A stretch of 51,496 bases of DNA from Octopus bimaculoides (GCF_001194135.2 NC_068986.1:96164985-96216480); one strand, 5' to 3'; shown: positions 1,039-20,447, numbered from the stretch's first letter. Translations and numbers: made by a program. The notes: a model not told the origin generated them from the letters alone.

Positions 1039-2395
1039 CAGTTTGGGGTCATGCCAGGGCAAAGCACCACTGATGCTATATTTCTGGTAAGACAGCTGCG
1101 GGAGAAATACCTAGCCGAAGATAAACCTCTGTACCTGGCTTTCGTTGACATGGAGAAAGCCTTTGACAGGGTCCCCCGATCCCTTATCTGGTGGTCAATG
1201 AGGAAACTAGGGATAGATGAATGGTTAGTGAGAGCTGTGCGAGCCATGTACAGGGACGCTGTCAGTAAGGTGAGGGTTGGCAATGAGTACAGTGAAGAAT
1301 TCCGAGTAGAGGTAGAGGTCCACCAAGGTTCAGTCCTCAGCCCCCTCCGATTTATCATAGTCCTCCAGTCAATAACACAGGAATTCAAGACAGGATGCCC
1401 CTGGGAGCTCCTCTATGCTGATNNNNNNNNNNNNNNNNNNNNNNNNNNNNNNNNNNNNNNNNNNNNNNNNNNNNNNNNNNNNNNNNNNNNNNNNNNNNNN
1501 NNNNNNNNNNNNNNNNNNNNNNNNNNNNNNNNNNNNNNNNNNNNNNNNNNNNNNNNNNNNNNNNNNNNNNNNNNNNNNNNNNNNNNNNNNNNNNNNNNNN
1601 NNNNNNNNNNNNNNNNNNNNNNNNNNNNNNNNNNNNNNNNNNNNNNNNNNNNNNNNNNNNNNNNNNNNNNNNNNNNNNNNNNNNNNNNNNNNNNNNNNNN
1701 NNNNNNNNNNNNNNNNNNNNNNNNNNNNNNNNNNNNNNNNNNNNNNNNNNNNNNNNNNNNNNNNNNNNNNNNNNNNNNNNNNNNNNNNNNNNNNNNNNNN
1801 NNNNNNNNNNNNNNNNNNNNNNNNNNNNNNNNNNNNNNNNNNNNNNNNNNNNNNNNNNNNNNNNNNNNNNNNNNNNNNNNNNNNNNNNNNNNNNNNNNNN
1901 NNNNNNNNNNNNNNNNNNNNNNNNNNNNNNNNNNNNNNNNNNNTCTCACTCAGAGTAAAAGGCAGACTGTATGACGCATGTGTACGAACAGCCATGCTTC
2001 GTGGCAGTGAAACATGGGCCGTGACTGCTGAAGACATGCGTAGGCTCGCAAGGAATGAAGCCAGTATTCCCCGATGGATGTGTAATGTCAGTGTGCATAC
2101 TAGATAGAGTATCAGTACCTTGAGAGAAAAGTTGAACCTAAGAAGCCTAAGATGTCGTTTGAAAGAGAGATGACTGTGCTGGTATGGTCATGTGTTGCGA
2201 ATGAATGAGGACAGCTGTGTGAAAAAATGTCACACCCTAGCAGTTGAGGGAACCTGTGGAAGAGGTAGACCCAGGAAGACCTGGGATAAGGTGGTGAAGC
2301 ATGGCCTTCGAACACTGGGCCTTACTGAGGCAATGACTAGTGACAAAGACCTTTGGAGATATGCTGTGCTTGAGAAGACCCAACAAGCCAAGTGA
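1039..2395 (+). pseudogene. RTE ORF2 reverse transcriptase fragment with in-frame stops and a 521-N gap
   Basis: Track ORFs 808-1974, 1415-2107 and 2192-2395 are collinear pieces of one RTE ORF2; stops at 2105-2107 and near 2171. Confidence 0.9.
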
Positions 2396-2416: not shown

Positions 2417-3020
2417 CCAGTGGGTGTAACCAGCCCACTTATGAATACCCCTCATTCAGTGGACAATAAACTTTGCTTGCAAAGACCTATTGAGGCACGT
2501 GAAATCAAAATCAAAATCAAAATGACCGACATGGCCGATGACAGTACCACCTGATTCGCACTTGTGTCAGTGGAACGTTAAAAGCACATCCAAGTATGGG
2601 GTATAACCAGCCCACTTATGAGTACCCCTTATTCATTGGACAATAAACTTTGCTTGCAAAGACCTATTGAAGCAAGTGAAATCACAATCAAAATTGCTGA
2701 TGTGGCCGATGACAGTACTGCCTGATTGACACTTGTGCCAGTGGAACGTTAAAAGCACCTCTGAGCGTGATTGTTGCCAGGGCCACAGATTGGCTCCCGT
2801 GCCGGTGGCACGTAAAAAGCACCGTTCGAGCGTGATCATTGCAAGTGTTACCTTACCGGCACTTGTACCGGTGGCACGTGAAAAACAACATTCGAGCGTG
2901 GTCGTTGCCAGTGCTGCCAGACTGGCTCCCGTGCAGGTAGCACATAAAAAACACCTTTTGAGCATGGTTGTTGCCATAACCGCCTGACTGGCCCTCGTAC
3001 CGGTGACACGTAAAAGCACC
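2417..3020 (+). repeat. Tandem repeats in the RTE 3'UTR: a ~175-bp duplication followed by 66-bp units
   Basis: 2417-2590 is similar to 2591-2760; GGTGGCACGTAAAA-like motif starts at 2804, 2870, 2936 and 3002. Confidence 0.85.
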
Positions 3021-3390: not shown

Positions 3391-5546
3391 TTAGCAAGTA
3401 ATCCGTAATTTGCTTCTTATTTTTTACTTGTTTCAGTCATTGGACTGTGGCTATGCTGAGGCACGACCTTGAAAGGCTTTTGTGTTTTGCAGAGGAGGAT
3501 TTATCAGCCATGTAGTGAGAATTTTTGGTCACCAGTGGGACTGCAATGTTGGAGGAGAATGGTGTATTGTTGAAGACCATCCTTGTGTGGTCTAGCTGGC
3601 CATGATTTAATAAATGAAGCAAACGTCCAAACTTTTGACTTTTAACATATTTATGGCTGGATATGGTTTATTGTGTTTGCTGTTTCCAAAAGAACGATAC
3701 TGATAAATATAACAGCTGACTGAGAGGAGAGAACTGCAATTTGTCTGTAGAAGGTTAACTGTGGTATATTGTAGGTGAGTGCTCAAGATCATCTGCACGA
3801 ATGTCTGAGGCTGTCTGTCAAGGCCATCTTCTTGAGTTAGGCACCAAACGGTTTTTATAGGGTAAAGAAGAGGCAAGTTTTAGATCATTTGAGGAGCTAT
3901 TTCATGCCACAGCTTCATGTGAAACTGTGGTGGCTCACTTGAGGATTCTTGCGGTAGCAGATCAAATCCCTACGAGTGAAATGCAGTTTGGTAGACGGAA
4001 AGTAATTAGTAAAGGAGTGTTTAGTGAAAGTTATTTATAGTACAAAATATTGAATATTTTGCTAAATTTTTCGAGAAAAGTGAGGGATTTACCCAGTCGG
4101 ACTCCAGTTGTTGGGTTTAACAGTACTTGCTTGACATCCCTTCACACAGTGCTTTACGAAGGATACGATAATTTTTAAGTTCATCACACTCTGGATAAGA
4201 TGCAATGGACGCTCTGCTTTCTGAGTGAAATTCTTTTTTTGTACAGTGTTAGAATCCTATGCAGTGTCAGACGTACACTCAATCATCAGAAACATACAAA
4301 TTAAGTTTTGACTCAACCAACAAGACTTTTGACTTGTCTAACGACATCCAATTCTCATACTTGTTGTCCAGCCAGTATAACACTGTTGCTACTACTGCTG
4401 CTTGTTGCCAATACTGCTACTGACGATGACGGCGATAATAAAAATGACGACGACAGCAAAGTAATGCAACAACAAAAACAACAAACCAGAACAGAAATAA
4501 AACAAAATATATATGAAACCCAATGCAATATAACAAAGTGAGCATTCTTGTTGTTAATCCAAGCACGACACACACCCATGCACACAGAGGCACACATACA
4601 CACAAACGTACACATGTACGCACACACACACACATATGACAACAAACATATGCATTCATACACAAAACATTCTTCTTAAAGTGATTGCAGCCAAGATGCA
4701 TTTCACCACGCCTCATGAAGAATCTCTGTCCTCCGTTAGTTTTATCAAATCCATAATTTCACACATATTTCAACCAATGATATGAAAGTAGGTGAGTAGT
4801 TTTTCTCTTATTAGGGAGCAGACGTCTCCATAATATAACATCCGGTATGGCCAGGTGTTCAGCATGAGAGCAGTGACATGAAAAGCCTACTCTGCGTTAA
4901 GCAACAATAGTAAGGATTAATTTGAATGTGTCAATAAATTTCTTCTTTGGTCCTTTTCTCATAAACAAAATATTTTGAGGTCTCATAGTTAGCCTGAAGG
5001 ACGTACAATCACAACGATTTTTAGACTCTTTCTTCATAGTTCAGGTTTTGGCCCAGAAGTTCGCCATTTTTGTTCATTTTGAAATAATTGATTGCCAGAT
5101 GTAAAGCATGCTAAAAGCACTTCAGGTTTGTCCCATGCATTTAAAAATGTCTTTCTTACTATCACTAATATAGTGTATGGATTCGAACCCCAACTGTATG
5201 ATAATCAATTAAGCATCATGTGTGAGCAACCACAGTTTCAGTGTGAAGGTGTGCATATGGCTCGTCGAATGATTCAAAATCGCCTCTTCTTCATCCTATA
5301 AAAACCGTTTGGCGTCTAACTCAGAACAAATTAACTTCAACCATACATAGACACATACATAAGTGTGTATGTGTAGATATAATACGAATATATATATATG
5401 TACTAGACTACCAGTGACCTGTTGGGCCACCTAAAAAGTCTAAGTTTCCCAGCAATGGAGTTTTGTTTCATGGTTTTTTTTATTCTAGGTTATTTTGCAT
5501 GCTTTCAACGAAATCATGTGTAAATGGCTCTTTTCCCCAGAAATGG

Positions 5547-5665
5547 AAAGATTTGGCTGCTATCTCTTAGACGCCCTGCTACCACGTAACAGGTATTTTG
5601 GGTCCTTTATCGTAAATAGCTGTTTCGTGGTAGCAGGGCATGCTAGAAATAGCAGCCAAATCTTT
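5547..5665. repeat. Inverted repeat, 40-bp arms and 39-bp spacer (family D fragments in opposite orientation)
   Basis: AAAGATTTGGCTGCTAT...GCCCTGCTACCACG (5547-5586) versus its reverse complement at 5626-5665. Confidence 0.85.
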
Positions 5666-5723
5666 GGAGTTGAGATACGTTGAAAGCACTCGAAAAAGTT
5701 TTTGTAATGGTATTCCTTTGGGG

Positions 5724-5962
5724 CGATCTTTTGCTTTGACTCTCAGAACTGTCATCTAGATCAGCTCGTCTTGTTCGTTAATTTTCGTAAAAATTTGTTA
5801 TTTATTTACTTTTGTTTTAAAGTGAAAGAGAGGAGAAAGTAAAAGATATATAAATGTGTATATGAAAAGGACGTGCGCGTATGTGTGTGCGTGTGTGTGT
5901 GAGAGAGAGAGCTATAGTGCCACTTACACATACATGAGAACACACACGTTCGCTCACTCACA

Positions 5963-6002
<40 letters not shown>

Positions 6003-6012
6003 NNNNNNNNNN

Positions 6013-6046
<34 letters not shown>

Positions 6047-6193
6047 TCTCTCGCTCGCTCTCTCTCACACACACATGCACACGCACATACAAAAAAGATG
6101 TACACATATATAGTGATGTATGCACGTATACATGACAACACACCCCTTCACTCACTCTCTCTCTCTTTCTCTCTCATTTTCTCTCTCTCTCGC

Positions 6194-6247
<54 letters not shown>

Positions 6248-6384
6248 GTCCATTTCATATACATATACATACATCTTTCACTTTCTCTTCCCTTTCACTT
6301 TAAAACAAAAGTAAATAAATAAATAAAAATTACGGAAATTAACGAACTCTGGATGACAGTTCTGAGAGTCAAAGCGAAAGATCG
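5724..6384. mobile_element. Foldback-like element or long-TIR MITE, ~190-bp arms around a microsatellite core
   Basis: 5724-~5912 is the reverse complement of ~6195-6384, including mirrored (GT)n(GA)n versus (CT)n(CA)n; no TSD seen. Confidence 0.7.
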
Positions 6385-6757: not shown

Positions 6758-7185
6758 AGTGCAGGAGTGGTTGTATGGTAAGTAGCTTGTTTACCAACCA
6801 CATGGTTCCGAGTTTAGTCCCACTGCGTGGAACCTTGGTCAAGTGTTTTCTACTATAACCTCGGGCCGACCAAAGCGTTGTGAGTGGATTTGGTAGACGG
6901 AAACTGAAAGAATTCCGTCGTATATATATGTGTGGGTCTGTGTGTGCATGTGTGTGTGTTTGTGTGTGTGTGTGTGGATGTATTTTTGTGTGTCTGTATT
7001 TGTGCCCCCAACCATCGCTTGACAACCGATGCTGGTGTGTTTACGTCCCCCTGACTTAGCGGTTCGGTAAAAGAGACCAATAGAATAAGTACTAGGCTTA
7101 CAAAGAATAAGTCCTGGGGTTGATTTGCTCGACTAAAGGCGGTGTTCCAGCATGGCCGCAGTCAAATGACTAAAAGAATAAAAGA
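6758..7185 (+). mobile_element. Full-length family A SINE (~430 bp): tRNA-like head, CORE-like motif, internal (GT)n, unique 3' half
   Basis: Head GCAGGAGTGGTTGTATGGTAAG...AGTCCC; many partial copies in the window. Resembles published tRNA-derived octopus SINEs, family name not assigned. Confidence 0.85.
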
Positions 7186-7251
<66 letters not shown>

Positions 7252-7264
7252 ACGCATGTGTGTA

Positions 7265-7408
7265 CAGAGGCAGGCCGAAGAGGGTGCTGAGGGGCATGTG
7301 CCGCCCTCAAGAAAGGAAGTGCACTCTTCTAAATAATGTTACTACGTTCTTTTCTCCTGGAATTGATTTCCTTATGACCTTGTACTCACCCTTCGAAAAA
7401 TGCTGCTG
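7265..7408. mobile_element. Possible decayed hAT-type MITE
   Basis: CAG...CTG ends and a GGGGCATGTGCCGCCC subterminal motif; TSD unconvincing because it sits in a microsatellite. Confidence 0.3.
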
Positions 7409-8329
7409 TATGTATGAATGGATGGATGGATACACAAACAGACACACACATGCGTATGTGCACTCGTGTCTAACACTAGGACGTGGGAAGACCTTTCACT
7501 GCAGAAATAGTCCTATAAGCAAAATTATATGAGTGTGTGTGTCTGTGTGTGAGTATTTATGTATGTATGCTTGTATATGTCTATATATGTATGTATATAC
7601 ACACACACACACACACAAACATATATATATATATATATATATATATACGCTTGTATATATGTGTATGTATGTATGTATGTATATATGTGTGTGTGTGTGT
7701 ATGTATGCATATATGTATGTATGTATGTATGTATATACTTAAAATTCACTAATAAGGCTTTCAAATATATAACTGTAGAGGTATCTACATTATACATATT
7801 TCAAGTATTACACAGTGTTCTCTATATTATATATCTACATTTCACAAATACACGCACGTACTCGAACACACAAAACGCGCACACACACATACACACGCAC
7901 CACACACACATACACACACACACACACGAATAAATTTAGAAAGTAATACGTAGAATTCGTTATAGAAACTATAATACAATCGCAAATCAACAGCTGAGAC
8001 ATATTAAACAAAGTAAATATATGGATTAGGCTTATCTTCTCAGAGACGTAGAAATAATTCTAATCCATAGATGTATATTAATACTTGTCTCGGTTGTTGA
8101 TTTGCTATTGTACCACTCTTTGTATAACGAATTATCTCTCTCTTTCTCTCTCTGTCTGCCTCTGTTTGGCTGCCTGTCAGTCTCTCTTTGTTATACATTT
8201 ATGGATACATAAATACATACATGTGTGTGTGCGCGCGCGCGTGTATACAGACATATACACACATATTAGTATAAATGCATACAAATAAACATACACACAC
8301 ACATACACACGGATAAGACCTTAACAATC

Positions 8330-9440: not shown

Positions 9441-9720
9441 GTAAGATTTGCAACTGTTTAATTTGAGTCTATCATTTCACCACCCACTCCTGACATTCTA
9501 CCAACTCTACCACCTTCACAAATAATAATAATGATTTCTAATACTGGTACACAGCTGCATACACTCGAAATCGCTTGTTATCGAATGATTATTGCCATCA
9601 AAATTAATAGGACCCCTTAAGACGGCGAACTGGCAGAATTGTTACCGCATCGGACAAAATGATTAACTTCCGAATTTATGTTCTAAATTGTAATGCCACC
9701 GGAATCCACTTTGCTTTTCA

Positions 9721-9914
9721 GGTAAATTTTCAGATTAACACCCGCACGATTTTCAGTAGTGTGTTAGGGTTAGGGTTAGGGTTTTAGGGTTAGGGTTAGG
9801 GTTTTAGGGTTAGGGTTAGTGTTTTAGGGTTAAGGTTAGGGTTAGGGTTAGGGACGGAATTCCCACTCTAACACCCTAGTGAAAATCGTGCGGGTGTTAA
9901 TCTGAAAATTAACC
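9721..9914. mobile_element. 194-bp MITE with 47-bp TIRs and an 8-bp TSD (Merlin-like) carrying telomeric repeats
   Basis: TIRs 9721-9767 and 9868-9914 (44/47 matched), starting GGT(A/T)A; TSD GCTTTTCA at 9713-9720 and 9915-9922. Confidence 0.9.
9764..9853 (+). repeat. Interstitial telomeric repeat, 14 TTAGGG-type hexamers
   Basis: [(TTAGGG)3 TT]x3 followed by five hexamers; two variant units (TTAGTG, TTAAGG). Confidence 0.97.
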
Positions 9915-11420
9915 GCTTTTCATTCTTCGTGGGCCATGCAATCGACTTAATCTTCCCCCGAAATTACTGGCCTTGTGCCAAAATTTAAGATCAAAATGAA
10001 TAGGACCTAAACTTATTTGTTTAATGCTAGCTGATTATTTTTACGGAAAAAGTTTCATCCTAAGTTATCATAATAAATGGCTTTCACCGAATTTGTTGGA
10101 AGAATATTAACTTGACTACTACTTTATTTTATCAACTCTAGATGTAAAATTTCAGAACTCATGGTTCACCAAATATACAACAAATCCAATAAGAATGTCC
10201 ATAAACAGATTGGAGTACAAAGAATTGAATTACTGAAAGCAAACTGTCCCCTCTCATTTGTAGCATATTCTTTCAACATCGCTATGGATGTCCTGTTTAA
10301 TGCCATGCGTGGGCCCTCGACTCCAAATGAAGTTGTTGGGATGTCGTTCTGATGTACACCTGTCTTTGAAAAAAATTTCAGACCTGGTGAAGCCTACTAC
10401 TCTCCGGGTTTCAAAGCAGCAGTTTCTTCTAGAAAAAGAAAGAATCAAAGAAACAAAGATAAAGAATGATGAATCGGTCCTAGTACGGTGCTGGTACTTT
10501 ATTTATCGACTCCGAAAGGACGAGCTAAGCTCACTCTACTTGCAGAGGCCGCTGGTTGAACTTTCTTTTTTGCACATTGATGTTTCTGCACATGTTGTAC
10601 CAGTTTGGGTTGTGCAATTATCCTGTGCAGCAACATAGATTTGTGAACCATCGTAGATTGATGGCTAGTTTTTGACATGCAGACGTCTTAAACACACACA
10701 CATACACTGTCACCACCACCACCACAACAACAACAACAATACAATAACACAAGCCATGTGGCAATAACGAAACAGTTCTGGTCTTACGGCATTGTCTGAT
10801 ATGTACTGATAATTAAGTTAACCGTGTATTCGAGATGAAATATAGAAAGAACATAGGACAGGAAGGGCCTAAAATTTTTAGTAGTTAGGGAGACGAGTAA
10901 AGCACGATGATGGTCGTATACAGCACTTCAAGTAACGAAAGTAAGCTGGTTGTCATATTTCAGTATGTGGTTTTGTGGGTAGATTCATGATGTCCTGGAC
11001 GGATGGCATTGGACTTAGGACGGAGAACCGAGCAGTGATTCAGAAGCAGATAATGCATCGTTTCGGAGGTTTGTAAGGAGAAAAAAACAACACCGGAGCT
11101 CAGAGAAAAGTACACGCGTCAGATGTTATCTATTTGGAAACTGCATCCATAAAAAAAAAACTTGTGGTTCCTAAAATTTGTTGACACAACTCCTGTGCAC
11201 CCTTTTTTCTTTGTGGCTCTCTTACAGCTCCTTTTCTTGTCTTTTTTGTTTTTCTTTTATATAGTGTCCTGTGCATGCACATTTGGCTTTCATTGCTACT
11301 TTTTTTTAGTTGATTTATTACTGCTTTCTGTTCCCTCTTTTACCCTTTTTACGACGAGTTGTAATACACTTGAGTACTGCATATAATAAACGCGTTGCTG
11401 TGGCTGTTGTTCTTGTTGTT

Positions 11421-11530
11421 AAGGCGGCGAGTTGGTAGAAACTTTAGTGCTTCGGACAAAATGCTTAGCGGCATTTCTTCCGGCTCTTTACGTTCTGACT
11501 TCAAATACCGCTGAGGTTAACTTTGCCATA
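11421..11530 (+). mobile_element. Family B SINE head fragment
   Basis: GGCGGCGAGTTGGTAGAA...ACGTTCTGACTTCAAATACC...AACTTTGCC. Confidence 0.75.
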
Positions 11531-11540
11531 AACTATAATT

Positions 11541-11588
<48 letters not shown>

Positions 11589-19687: not shown

Positions 19688-19920
19688 TATTTCTTCACTG
19701 CCCACAAGGGGCTACACACAGAGGAGACAAACAAGGACAGACAAACGGATTAAGTCGATTATATCGACCCAGTGCGTAACTGGTACTTATTTAATCAACC
19801 CCGAAAGGATGAAAGGCAAAGTCGACCTCGGCGGAATTTGAACTCAGAACGTAGCGGCAGACGAAATACCGCTAAGCATTTCGCCCGGCGTGCTAACGTT
19901 TCTGCCAGCTCGCCGCCTTT
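19688..19920 (-). mobile_element. Full-length family B tRNA-derived SINE with a 14-bp TSD
   Basis: TSD ATCTAACTATTTCT at 19674-19687 and 19921-19934; box B-like GAGTTCAAATTCC; central GACTTTGCCTTTCATCCTTTCGGGG domain resembles shared SINE central domains (Meta-type; assignment uncertain). Confidence 0.92.
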
Positions 19921-19932
19921 ATCTAACTATTT

Positions 19933-20447
19933 CTACTTGACCGAAACATGTCCGTAGCTGTCACCTTGCCTGCTAACAACGATCAAATTTTCCCTCTAAA
20001 CACAAAAATTAATGTTGTTATAATTTGGAAGGNNNNNNNNNNNNNNNNNNNNNNNNTAAGACTAAAATTTAAAATTCAAGTGAAATTTTAAAATTCCGTG
20101 AAATTATCTCCCCCTTTTATTATTATTGTTGTTATTATTATTAAAATTATTAACAACTGCTGCTAAGTTGATTTTTTATTTTATTTTTGCTTCTTTTCCG
20201 ACAGCTACCTAAATCATATAAATTCATGCCTTTTGTCCTCTTACCTTTTGTAATAATGCAAATTTTATTGGCCACAATTATTTGTAACAGTCGCTATTTA
20301 ATAGAGATTAAAATAGGTTCGAGTAGATTGTTCCGCTAATGAGGTCAAGTAAGACCAAAACATGTTCACAGTTGTCTTCCTTGCCTGCTAACAACGATCA
20401 AATTTTCCCTCTAAACACAAAAATTAATGTTGTTATAATTTGGAAGG
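19933..20447 (+). ncRNA. Two tandem degenerate minimal hammerhead-ribozyme-like motifs (Penelope/retrozyme-type remnant)
   Basis: Copy 1 CTACTTGACC-GAAAC-ATGTC (19933-19952); copy 2 CTAATGA-GGTC..GACC-AAAACATGTT (20336-20366); both followed by the same 69 bp. Confidence 0.5.

What the first reader, a model, noticed from the sequence alone, without database searches (positions are those of the whole stretch)
9713..9922. Merlin-like MITE whose cargo is telomeric DNA
Seen: a 194-bp element with 47-bp TIRs (3 mismatches) starting GG, a perfect 8-bp TSD (GCTTTTCA), and an interior of 14 TTAGGG-type units plus a ~14-bp linker. It is inserted cleanly into an old SINE, so it arrived by transposition rather than telomere fusion or double-strand-break healing. 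Known: GG-terminal TIRs with 8-9-bp TSDs typify the Merlin/IS1016 superfamily, and TTAGGG is the common metazoan telomere repeat. Inference: a DNA transposon family may be dispersing interstitial telomere seeds (G-quadruplexes, telomere-protein binding sites, possible de novo telomere or fragile sites).
Basis: partly seen in the sequence, partly recalled or inferred. Interest (0 to 1): 0.85.

Follow-up and report, generated by a model that had tools for sequence, protein, structure and literature searches.

The report
Hairpin MITE with telomere-like repeat
A 194-base non-coding "jumping gene" remnant in an octopus genome really does carry a stretch of telomere-like DNA. That stretch looks like an expansion of a motif built into the element's own arms, not captured chromosome-end DNA, and it is still untested whether the family spreads such repeats around the genome.

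Summary
There is a 194-bp element at 9721-9914 with 47-50-nt terminal inverted repeats starting GG and a perfect 8-bp target-site duplication (GCTTTTCA). It holds 14 TTAGGG-type units and sits cleanly inside an old octopus SINE whose paralogs carry the target site once.

1. The tract is not plain (TTAGGG)n. It is 4.6 copies of a 20-nt higher-order unit, TTTTAGGG-TTAGGG-TTAGGG. Its first copy is continuous with the left arm, and one degenerate copy survives in the right arm. Without the 84-nt surplus the element is a 110-bp palindrome. So the tract is an arm-derived minisatellite, not captured telomere or a simple telomerase product.

2. The Merlin assignment is plausible but unproven. GG ends and exact 8-bp duplications match five Merlin-family insertions I checked in Octopus loci, four with a perfect duplication and one 7/8. 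No transposase-bearing element with this TIR was found.

3. The one other TIR relative found, a 3.1-kb foldback element in O. sinensis, has no TTAGGG. However, the same 8-6-6 repeat occurs at the centre of an unrelated palindromic element in O. bimaculoides. Transposon-linked spread of telomere-like repeats therefore remains open.

Moderate interest; a new variant of the known tandem-repeat-bearing MITEs.

The parts
9619..9712 (+). Left part of the host tRNA-derived octopus SINE (old, diverged copy)
   Evidence: Aligns to window paralogs at 35780-35990(-), 19760-19960(-) and 11390-11560(+). The same SINE is found in Octopus loci L001-L006 but not in the non-octopus loci L007-L011.
9713..9720 (.). 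Left copy of the 8-bp target-site duplication GCTTTTCA
   Evidence: Perfect direct repeat with 9915-9922 (D9). The SINE paralogs have GCCTTTCA once at this position.
9721..9770 (+). Left terminal inverted repeat, 5'-GGTAAATTTTCAGATTAACACCCGCACGATTTTCAGTAGTGTGTTAGGGT
   Evidence: Inverted repeat I1, 50 nt at 92%. 31/35 identical to the TIR of the foldback element at L001 161-3272.
9757..9853 (+). Telomere-like array: 14 TTAGGG-type units organised as 4.6 copies of a 20-nt unit (TTTTAGGG-TTAGGG-TTAGGG). The first copy overlaps the inner end of the left TIR.
   Evidence: TRF period 20, 91% matches. Direct-repeat family D1, spacing 20/20/20, starting at 9757. Edit distance is 4 to the (8-6-6)n model against 8 to (TTAGGG)n; 0 of 300 null simulations reached this gain.
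9854..9864 (.). Linker and centre of symmetry (GAATTC at 9857-9862)
   Evidence: Palindrome I3. The arm-to-arm alignment meets at GAA|TTC.
9865..9914 (-). Right terminal inverted repeat. Its inner end keeps one unexpanded, degenerate copy of the 20-nt unit (reverse complement TAGGGTGTTAGAGTGGGAAT).
   Evidence: 52 matches and 3 mismatches to the left arm, with an 84-nt surplus in the left arm only.
9915..9922 (.). Right copy of the target-site duplication GCTTTTCA
   Evidence: D9.
9923..9953 (+). Right part of the host SINE (carries an internal deletion relative to the paralogs)
   Evidence...TTCTTCGTGGGCCATGCAATCGACTTAATC aligns to the SINE tail GTAATCGACTTAATCC.

Best explanation
This is a non-autonomous cut-and-paste DNA transposon of the hairpin (palindromic MITE) type. 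It was most likely mobilised by a Merlin/IS1595-type DDE transposase. It inserted into an old SINE and duplicated 8 bp of target.

Its two arms each carry a short telomere-like motif at their inner end (TAGGG-TG-TTAGRG...). In the left arm a 20-nt segment holding that motif (TTTTAGGG-TTAGGG-TTAGGG) was tandemly amplified to about 4.6 copies, probably by replication slippage or unequal exchange. The stable hairpin, with the array in its loop, would favour this. The result is an 84-nt asymmetry in what is otherwise a 110-bp palindrome.

The tract is therefore an element-born minisatellite that happens to be telomere-like. It is not a captured piece of telomere.

Shown: the anatomy, the clean insertion, the 20-nt register with the TIR, and the single copy in the right arm.

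Inferred: the Merlin mobiliser, the slippage mechanism, and whether the expansion happened in the source copy (and so was transposed) or after insertion.
For: - TIR, TSD and empty-site paralogs.
- Hairpin of -45 kcal/mol, z = -12.3.
- Period-20 structure. Direct-repeat family D1 starts at 9757, inside the TIR.
- Arm alignment gives 52 matches and 3 mismatches plus one 84-nt surplus.
- The (8-6-6)n model fits best among four periodic models, and no null simulation reached the gain.
- Merlin signature from the literature: terminal 5'-GG, TIR 24-462 bp, TSD 8-9 bp, and 191 Merlin sequences in O. bimaculoides (PMC8101967). O. vulgaris also has Merlin and 65 MITE families (PMC13282606).
- Octopus Merlin insertions checked here all have GG ends. 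Four have a perfect 8-bp TSD: family A at L001 (GCAAATCT) and L003 (CAAGGCTT); family B at L005 (AAACAAAG); a family-A MITE at L006 (CATTTTTT). A fifth, a family-A MITE at L005 10778-11249, has a 7/8 TSD.
- A relative of this TIR (31/35 identical, exact 8-bp TSD AAAAAAAT) bounds a 3.1-kb foldback element at L001 161-3272. Its arms contain a fragment of a family-B Merlin ORF (RKxTFLENSKLKCQQII...WAKEDLA) and about 170 bp of that Merlin's 5' end.
Against: - No autonomous element with this TIR was found. The TIRs of Merlin families A and B share only GG with it.
- The Merlin pieces inside the L001 foldback are arranged as ORF fragment followed by 5' terminus. That looks like nested or captured material, so the link to Merlin is indirect.
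- Only one copy is in hand, so source-copy expansion cannot be told from post-insertion expansion.
- The same 8-6-6 repeat in an element with unrelated arms (L004) is not explained by a purely local expansion from this TIR.
Confidence: 0.6

Rival explanations
1. One reading: a Merlin MITE family whose members generally carry telomeric DNA as cargo. By transposing, it seeds interstitial telomeric sites across the genome.
For: - The array's units are about as diverged from each other (95/90/68% to the first copy) as the two arms are (92%). This is compatible with the array arriving with the element.
- Telomere-like arrays with the same TTTTAGGG variant sit inside two other inverted-repeat elements, L004 5898-6022 and L005 7399-7488. 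These were the only other TTAGGG clusters in about 160 kb of Octopus DNA.
Against: - The only other member of this TIR group found has no TTAGGG.
- The arms of the L004 and L005 elements show no detectable similarity to this MITE.
- The tract is in register with the TIR and present once in the other arm, so it was not captured from a telomere.
- Only one copy is in the 51-kb window.
Confidence: 0.22
2. Local break repair. After insertion (or in one progenitor), the hairpin was cut near its tip. Telomerase then extended the 3' end ...GTGTTAGGG of the left half, and the ends were rejoined, as in the known model for short interstitial telomeric sequences arising during double-strand-break repair.
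For: - The array starts exactly at a TTAGGG seed.
- It lies on one side of the symmetry centre only.
- Its G-strand runs 5'->3' away from the left arm, which is the orientation telomerase would give.
- L004 shows the two-sided version: TTAGGG-like then CCCTAA-like, head to head.
Against: Telomerase should give uniform hexamers. Here an extra TT recurs every third unit (20-nt period), and the same pattern is seen in L004. The first 20-mer is TIR sequence (TAGTGTGTTAGGGTTAGGGT), not added sequence.
Confidence: 0.12
3. Same anatomy, but the element belongs to another superfamily that can give GG-type ends or 8-bp duplications (a Mutator-like element, hAT, P, or an unclassified TIR family) and not to Merlin.
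For: - No transposase link was found.
- There is no TIR similarity to the Octopus Merlin families A and B.
- O. vulgaris has 21 Mutator families, 21 hAT families and 49 unclassified TIR families among its recently active repeats (PMC13282606).
Against: - The TSD is exactly 8 bp in both insertions of this TIR group; 9 bp does not fit either.
- From general knowledge, MULEs usually give 9-11 bp, and hAT ends are YARNG with an nTnnnnAn target. Neither hAT feature is met here (GGTAA...; GCTTTTCA; AAAAAAAT).
- The foldback relative carries Merlin-B fragments.
Confidence: 0.3
4. Assembly artefact: a palindrome plus a simple repeat produced by mis-joining in a gapped draft assembly.
For: The window holds 3222 N and many short gaps. 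Palindromes and simple repeats are error-prone in short-read assemblies.
Against: There is no N in or near 9600-10000. The SINE continues across the element with a perfect 8-bp duplication. A related TIR with an 8-bp TSD exists in a chromosome-level O. sinensis assembly.
Confidence: 0.03

Closest known systems
Tandem-repeat-containing MITEs of molluscs and insects: DTC84 of Donax trunculus, pearl of oysters (PMC3879986); MITEs with hitchhiking microsatellites and Xstir of Xenopus (cited in PMC6947457)
   Same: A small non-coding element with inverted-repeat-bearing arms acting as a 'cassette' around a short internal tandem array. The array copy number is prone to change, which links transposition to the birth and spread of tandem repeats.
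   Different: Here the repeat is telomere-like (TTAGGG units in a 20-nt higher-order unit) and grows out of the TIR itself. The element has long TIRs and an 8-bp TSD, whereas DTC84/pearl have an AA target and short inverted repeats. Family-wide array variation has not been shown here.
Merlin superfamily non-autonomous elements (Feschotte 2004, as summarised in PMC8101967)
   Same: Terminal 5'-GG, TIR length within the 24-462 bp range, and an 8-bp TSD. Merlin is unusually abundant in Octopus. Octopus Merlin-A MITEs seen here (L005 10778-11249, L006 11190-11605) have the same general build.
   Different: No matching autonomous element was found. The TIR sequence is unrelated to the two Octopus Merlin families whose ends I defined. 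No Merlin element has been reported with a telomere-like interior in the papers I could search.
Short interstitial telomeric sequences inserted during double-strand-break repair (general knowledge; reviewed in Lin & Yan 2008 as cited in PMC9071541), and the degenerate ITS tracts of C. elegans (1,229 tracts, PMC9071541)
   Same: A short internal tract of the species' telomere motif, with G-quadruplex-forming potential. TTAGGG is the only experimentally determined cephalopod telomere motif (PMC13218726, PMC6160780).
   Different: This tract lies inside a transposon with TIRs and a TSD, and it has a 20-nt higher-order period continuous with the TIR. It does not have the uniform hexamers expected from telomerase.
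Foldback-type elements (long inverted arms built of subrepeats)
   Same: Near-complete palindrome with tandem subrepeats in the arms. The related element at L001 161-3272 is a 3.1-kb foldback with ~120-bp subrepeats that each repeat the inner half of the TIR.
   Different: The window element is only 194 bp and has an array in one arm only.

Membership tests
MITE (miniature inverted-repeat transposable element) | Small (under about 800 bp), non-coding | tested here: met
   194 bp. The only ORF touching it is a 42-aa read-through from the SINE.
MITE (miniature inverted-repeat transposable element) | Terminal inverted repeats and a flanking target-site duplication | tested here: met
   TIR 50 nt at 92%; TSD 8/8; empty site seen in SINE paralogs.
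MITE (miniature inverted-repeat transposable element) | Multi-copy family in the genome | tested here: inconclusive
   One copy in the 51-kb window. One diverged relative in 112 kb of other Octopus DNA. No Octopus genome could be searched by DNA; the metagenome and prokaryote collections gave nothing.
Merlin / IS1595-related superfamily | TIRs with conserved terminal 5'-GG-3' (PMC8101967) | tested here: met
   Both arms start GGT. The relative at L001 also starts GGT.
Merlin / IS1595-related superfamily | 8- or 9-bp target-site duplication | tested here: met
   Exactly 8 bp at the window insertion (GCTTTTCA) and at L001 161-3272 (AAAAAAAT). Same length as five Merlin-family insertions checked in Octopus loci, four perfect and one 7/8.
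Merlin / IS1595-related superfamily | TIR length 24-462 bp | tested here: met
   47-50 nt.
Merlin / IS1595-related superfamily | An autonomous partner with the same TIRs encoding a DDE_Tnp_IS1595 transposase | tested here: inconclusive
   Six Octopus loci around four Merlin proteins (PF12762) were fetched, and none carries this TIR at its ends. The foldback relative contains a Merlin-B ORF fragment and 5' end, but in an arrangement that suggests nesting or capture.
Merlin / IS1595-related superfamily | TIR sequence similarity to a known Merlin family | tested here: not met
   Only GG is shared with family A (GGCGATGTTTCG...) and family B (GGAACAGTCATGCC...). Repbase and Dfam were not available.
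hAT superfamily | 8-bp TSD with TIRs starting YARNG and target nTnnnnAn (general knowledge) | tested here: not met
   The TSD length fits, but the ends are GGTAA and the targets GCTTTTCA and AAAAAAAT do not fit nTnnnnAn.
Mutator-like elements | TSD usually 9-11 bp (general knowledge) | tested here: not met
   A 9-bp duplication does not fit either insertion; 8 bp is exact.
Telomerase-made interstitial telomeric sequence | Uniform head-to-tail copies of the telomere hexamer, with no transposon hallmarks | tested here: not met
   A 20-nt higher-order period fits better than the hexamer. The tract lies between TIRs with a TSD.
Tandem-repeat-containing MITEs (DTC84/pearl type) | Central tandem array between arms that hold inverted repeats | tested here: met
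Tandem-repeat-containing MITEs (DTC84/pearl type) | Array copy number varies among family members; AA target site | tested here: not met
   The target is an 8-bp duplication, not AA. Variation among members could not be tested because no second copy with the same TIR and an array was found.

The most novel reading that the evidence does not exclude
Octopus hairpin and foldback DNA transposons, mobilised by Merlin-type transposases, may systematically carry a telomere-like 20-nt higher-order repeat (TTTTAGGG-TTAGGG-TTAGGG) at the inner ends of their arms and spread it by transposition. At the density seen here (3 tracts in about 160 kb, all inside inverted-repeat elements), that would mean tens of thousands of internal telomere-like, G-quadruplex-prone sites. 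These could bind telomere proteins, act as fragile sites, or seed new telomeres after breakage.
Probability: 0.2. Interest if true: 0.75.

Novelty: new variant of a known kind. Interest (0 to 1): 0.42.

Why it matters
If the family-level version is true, it would give a concrete transposon-based route for scattering telomere-like DNA through a large, repeat-rich animal genome. It would also offer a natural system for asking whether such tracts recruit telomere proteins or mark breakpoints in the heavily rearranged cephalopod karyotype.

As it stands, the locus is a clean, well-resolved example of a tandem repeat being born from a transposon's own terminal sequence. It is also a caution that TTAGGG tracts in assemblies need not come from telomeres or telomerase.

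Tried and rejected
1. DNA scans for the TIR core found nothing: the exact 23-mer and a degenerate 25-mer covering both TIR variants in JGI metagenome contigs, and the 25-mer in GTDB genomes. These collections hold no cephalopod DNA, so this says nothing about copy number.

2. I tried to find other copies through spurious ORFs that read through the TIR (peptide VNFQINTRTIFSSVL), using a profile search of the 5.8-billion protein set.

3. I looked up ten window ORFs by exact sequence, hoping to fetch allelic or orthologous contigs. None is in the collection.

4. Four more Merlin-bearing loci (L007-L010) and L011 came from ENA metagenome assemblies. They are not octopus (no octopus SINE) and have no TIR and no TTAGGG cluster. 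They serve only as a negative control.

5. I first read the Merlin fragments in the L001 foldback as proof that the TIR is Merlin. I downgraded this after finding that family-B Merlin has its own GG terminus and 8-bp TSD at L005. The fragments may therefore be nested or captured.

6. I looked for a TSD around the L004 palindrome (5565-6294) and for a 5' end of the L004 Merlin copy, and found neither.

7. Rfam and tRNA scans of the window were empty.

8. Literature searches found no paper describing TE-borne telomere-like repeats in cephalopods.

Full report
**Observation**

The region reads exactly as described.

- GCTTTTCA occurs at 9713-9720 and again at 9915-9922.
- Between the two copies lies a 194-bp element (9721-9914). 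Its ends are a 50-nt inverted repeat of 92% complementarity, both arms starting GG (I1 and D9).
- The 29-nt core of the repeat occurs nowhere else in the window, and never in shuffles.
- All ten TTAGGG-dimer matches in the 51.5-kb window fall in 9764-9853, against 0.12 expected.
- As single-stranded DNA the element folds into one long hairpin with the array as the loop: -45 kcal/mol against -13 ± 2.6 for shuffles, z = -12.3.

The flanks are a diverged copy of a tRNA-derived SINE. Three paralogs in the window align across the insertion point and carry the target (GCCTTTCA) once. They are only about 68-70% identical to this copy. The same SINE is present in every Octopus locus I later fetched and absent from the non-octopus ones, so the window comes from an Octopus-lineage genome.

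**What the 'telomeric cargo' really is**

TRF reports a better period of 20 than of 6 (4.6 copies, 91% matches; consensus TTAGGGTTAGGGTTAGGGTT). Segmenting the tract gives unit lengths 6-6-6-8-6-6-8-6-6-8-6-6-6-6, so an extra TT (TTTTAGGG) appears every third unit.

The repeat finder places the first 20-mer at 9757. That is inside the TIR (TAGTGTGTTAGGGTTAGGGT) and in register with the following copies (D1).

I aligned the left half of the element against the reverse complement of the right half. This gives 52 matches, 3 mismatches and one 84-nt surplus in the left arm. Without the array, the element is therefore a 110-bp palindrome centred on GAATTC (9857-9862). The right arm still holds one degenerate, unexpanded copy of the unit (TAGGGTGTTAGAGTGGGAAT).

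The tract fits a (TTTTAGGG-TTAGGG-TTAGGG)n model with 4 edits, against 8 for (TTAGGG)n. The alternative 14- and 26-nt models are worse. None of 300 simulated mutated hexamer arrays showed such a gain.

Telomerase should make uniform hexamers. A 20-nt unit continuous with the arm points instead to tandem duplication of an arm segment that already contained a telomere-like motif. TTAGGG is indeed the only experimentally determined cephalopod telomere motif (Adachi et al. 2014, as cited in PMC13218726 and PMC6160780). So 'telomere-like' is fair, but 'captured telomeric DNA' is not.

**Superfamily**

According to PMC8101967, Merlin elements have TIRs of 24-462 bp with a conserved terminal GG and 8- or 9-bp TSDs. 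O. bimaculoides has 191 Merlin-related sequences, the most among the protostomes surveyed. PMC13282606 lists Merlin and 65 MITE families among the recently active repeats of O. vulgaris.

I took an O. bimaculoides Merlin fragment from that paper's supplement as a query. From it I recovered Octopus Merlin proteins (PF12762) and fetched six Octopus loci around them. Two families could be delimited.

- Family A is 8.7 kb with ~350-nt TIRs starting GGCGATGTTTCG. Its copies are over 99% identical between O. sinensis and O. vulgaris. It has 8-bp TSDs GCAAATCT (L001) and CAAGGCTT (L003).
- Family B has TIRs GGAACAGTCATGCC... / GGCAGTCATGCC... and the TSD AAACAAAG in L005.
- Two family-A MITEs also show 8-bp TSDs: L006 11190-11605 with CATTTTTT, and L005 10778-11249 with a 7/8 match.

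GG ends plus exactly 8 bp is therefore what Merlin does in these genomes, and the window element matches that. Its TIR sequence, however, matches neither family beyond GG.

**A relative of the TIR**

In about 112 kb of Octopus DNA, one relative turned up, at L001 161-3272 (O. sinensis). Its ends, GGTAAAATTACAGATTATCACCCCCACGATTTTCA, are 31/35 identical to the window TIR, and it has an exact 8-bp TSD, AAAAAAAT.

It is a 3.1-kb non-coding foldback, with arms over 90% complementary across roughly 1.4 kb. Its arms contain ~120-bp subrepeats that each repeat the inner half of the TIR. They also contain a ~100-bp fragment of the family-B transposase ORF (RKxTFLENSKLKCQQII...WAKEDLA), joined to about 170 bp of the family-B 5' end, starting at that family's terminal GG.

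This ties the TIR group to Merlin sequences, but only loosely. The order (ORF fragment, then 5' terminus) looks like nested or captured material and not like a simple internal deletion. The foldback has no TTAGGG tract.

It is, however, one diverged copy, so the test has little power.

**Other telomere-like tracts**

A scan of all Octopus DNA in hand (about 160 kb without N) found only three TTAGGG clusters: the window MITE, L004 5898-6022 (O. bimaculoides) and L005 7399-7488 (O. sinensis). All three lie inside inverted-repeat structures.

- The L004 tract is the centre of a ~730-bp palindrome (nested inverted repeats 5565-5608/6251-6294, 5711-5779/6072-6140 and others). It is two-sided, TTAGGG-like and then CCCTAA-like.
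- The L005 tract lies between inverted repeats 7149-7221 and 7538-7601.
- The L004 tract has the same 8-6-6 organisation (7 against 11 edits forward, 7 against 10 reverse; 0 of 300 null simulations). The L005 tract has the same TTTTAGRG variant at less regular spacing.
- The arms of these elements show no detectable similarity to the window MITE.
- About 94 kb of non-octopus eukaryotic DNA around Merlin genes had no such cluster.

The shared higher-order pattern in unrelated arms is not explained by a purely local expansion. It keeps open the idea that telomere-like modules travel with hairpin elements in Octopus. The sample is small, and it was chosen around Merlin genes.

**Mechanism, as best supported**

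A Merlin-type transposase probably acted in trans. It cut the hairpin MITE at its GG-terminal TIRs and pasted it into a SINE, making the 8-bp duplication. The anatomy is shown; the enzyme is inferred.

The telomere-like motif is part of both arms. In one arm a 20-nt block was amplified about 4.6-fold. The register and the single right-arm copy are shown. Slippage or unequal exchange is inferred, and is plausibly promoted because the array sits in the loop of a very stable hairpin.

Whether amplification preceded transposition cannot be decided from one copy. The similar divergence among 20-mers (95-68%) and between arms (92%) suggests the array is not much younger than the element.

The tract has twelve TTAGGG-type units with intact GGG runs, so G-quadruplex formation is expected from general knowledge. 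Telomere-protein binding and neo-telomere seeding are speculation.

**Comparison with what is known, and novelty**

MITEs that carry internal tandem repeats or microsatellites are well documented. Examples are DTC84 and pearl in bivalves (PMC3879986), and (GTCY)n-bearing MITEs and Xstir (cited in PMC6947457). This element works like those.

It differs in three ways:
- the repeat is telomere-like;
- it grows directly out of the TIR;
- the element has the Merlin-type end signature.

I found no report of such elements in cephalopods, or of telomere-like interiors in Merlin elements, within the searchable library. Repbase and Dfam could not be consulted. I rate it a new variant of a known kind.

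**Verdict**

The decisive test is a genome-wide census of the TIR in Octopus assemblies. It is simple, but it could not be run with the collections available here.

Noticed in passing
L001 161-3272 (O. sinensis CM016860.1): A 3.1-kb non-coding foldback element with a TIR 31/35 identical to the window MITE and the 8-bp TSD AAAAAAAT. Its arms are built of ~120-bp subrepeats that repeat the inner TIR half, 29-bp repeats derived from a Merlin ORF fragment, a family-B Merlin 5' end, and (TA)n.
   Followed up: yes
L004 5565-6294 (O. bimaculoides LGKD02092233.1): A ~730-bp palindrome whose centre is a head-to-head pair of telomere-like arrays (TTAGGG-like, then CCCTAA-like) with the same 8-6-6 unit pattern. 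No TSD was found. A third copy of its arm abuts the 3' end of the neighbouring Merlin-B copy (4505-4610), and a fragment occurs at L006 11934-12045.
   Followed up: partly
L005 7149-7601 (O. sinensis VCDQ01004827.1): A degenerate telomere-like tract (7399-7488) with TTTTAGRG variants, lying between inverted repeats. The ends and family of the surrounding element are unclear.
   Followed up: partly
L001 4265-12996; L003 4252-12997; L002 3878-12953: An 8.7-kb Merlin element (305-aa DDE_Tnp_IS1595 protein, ~350-nt TIRs starting GGCGATGTTTCG, 8-bp TSDs). Copies are over 99% identical, two in O. sinensis and one in O. vulgaris. This suggests very recent activity, or very recent divergence of the two assemblies' species.
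   Followed up: partly
L005 10778-11249: A family-A Merlin MITE inserted inside the transposase ORF of a family-B Merlin element (TSD 7/8). This is why that gene is annotated as partial.
   Followed up: partly
window 27049-29514 (-): Three collinear ORFs (310, 235 and 168 aa). The first two give weak, sub-threshold but collinear DUF4371 matches (model positions 5-116 and 140-233). This looks like a frameshifted transposase-derived (hAT-related/ZMYM1-like, from memory) gene.
   Followed up: partly
window 1048-1410 (+): A reverse-transcriptase fragment (RVT_1, E = 1e-12) that runs into an N gap. It is probably a LINE remnant.
   Followed up: partly
window 2735-3015: A 66-bp tandem repeat, 4.3 copies at 73% (GTGCCGGTGGCACGTAAAAAACACC...). 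It was not examined.
   Followed up: no
window, whole: The window has 3222 N in many short and some ~1-kb gaps, is very rich in di- and tetranucleotide microsatellites, and has 36% G+C. This is draft-quality assembly of a repeat-rich genome. At least seven copies of the host SINE are present.
   Followed up: no
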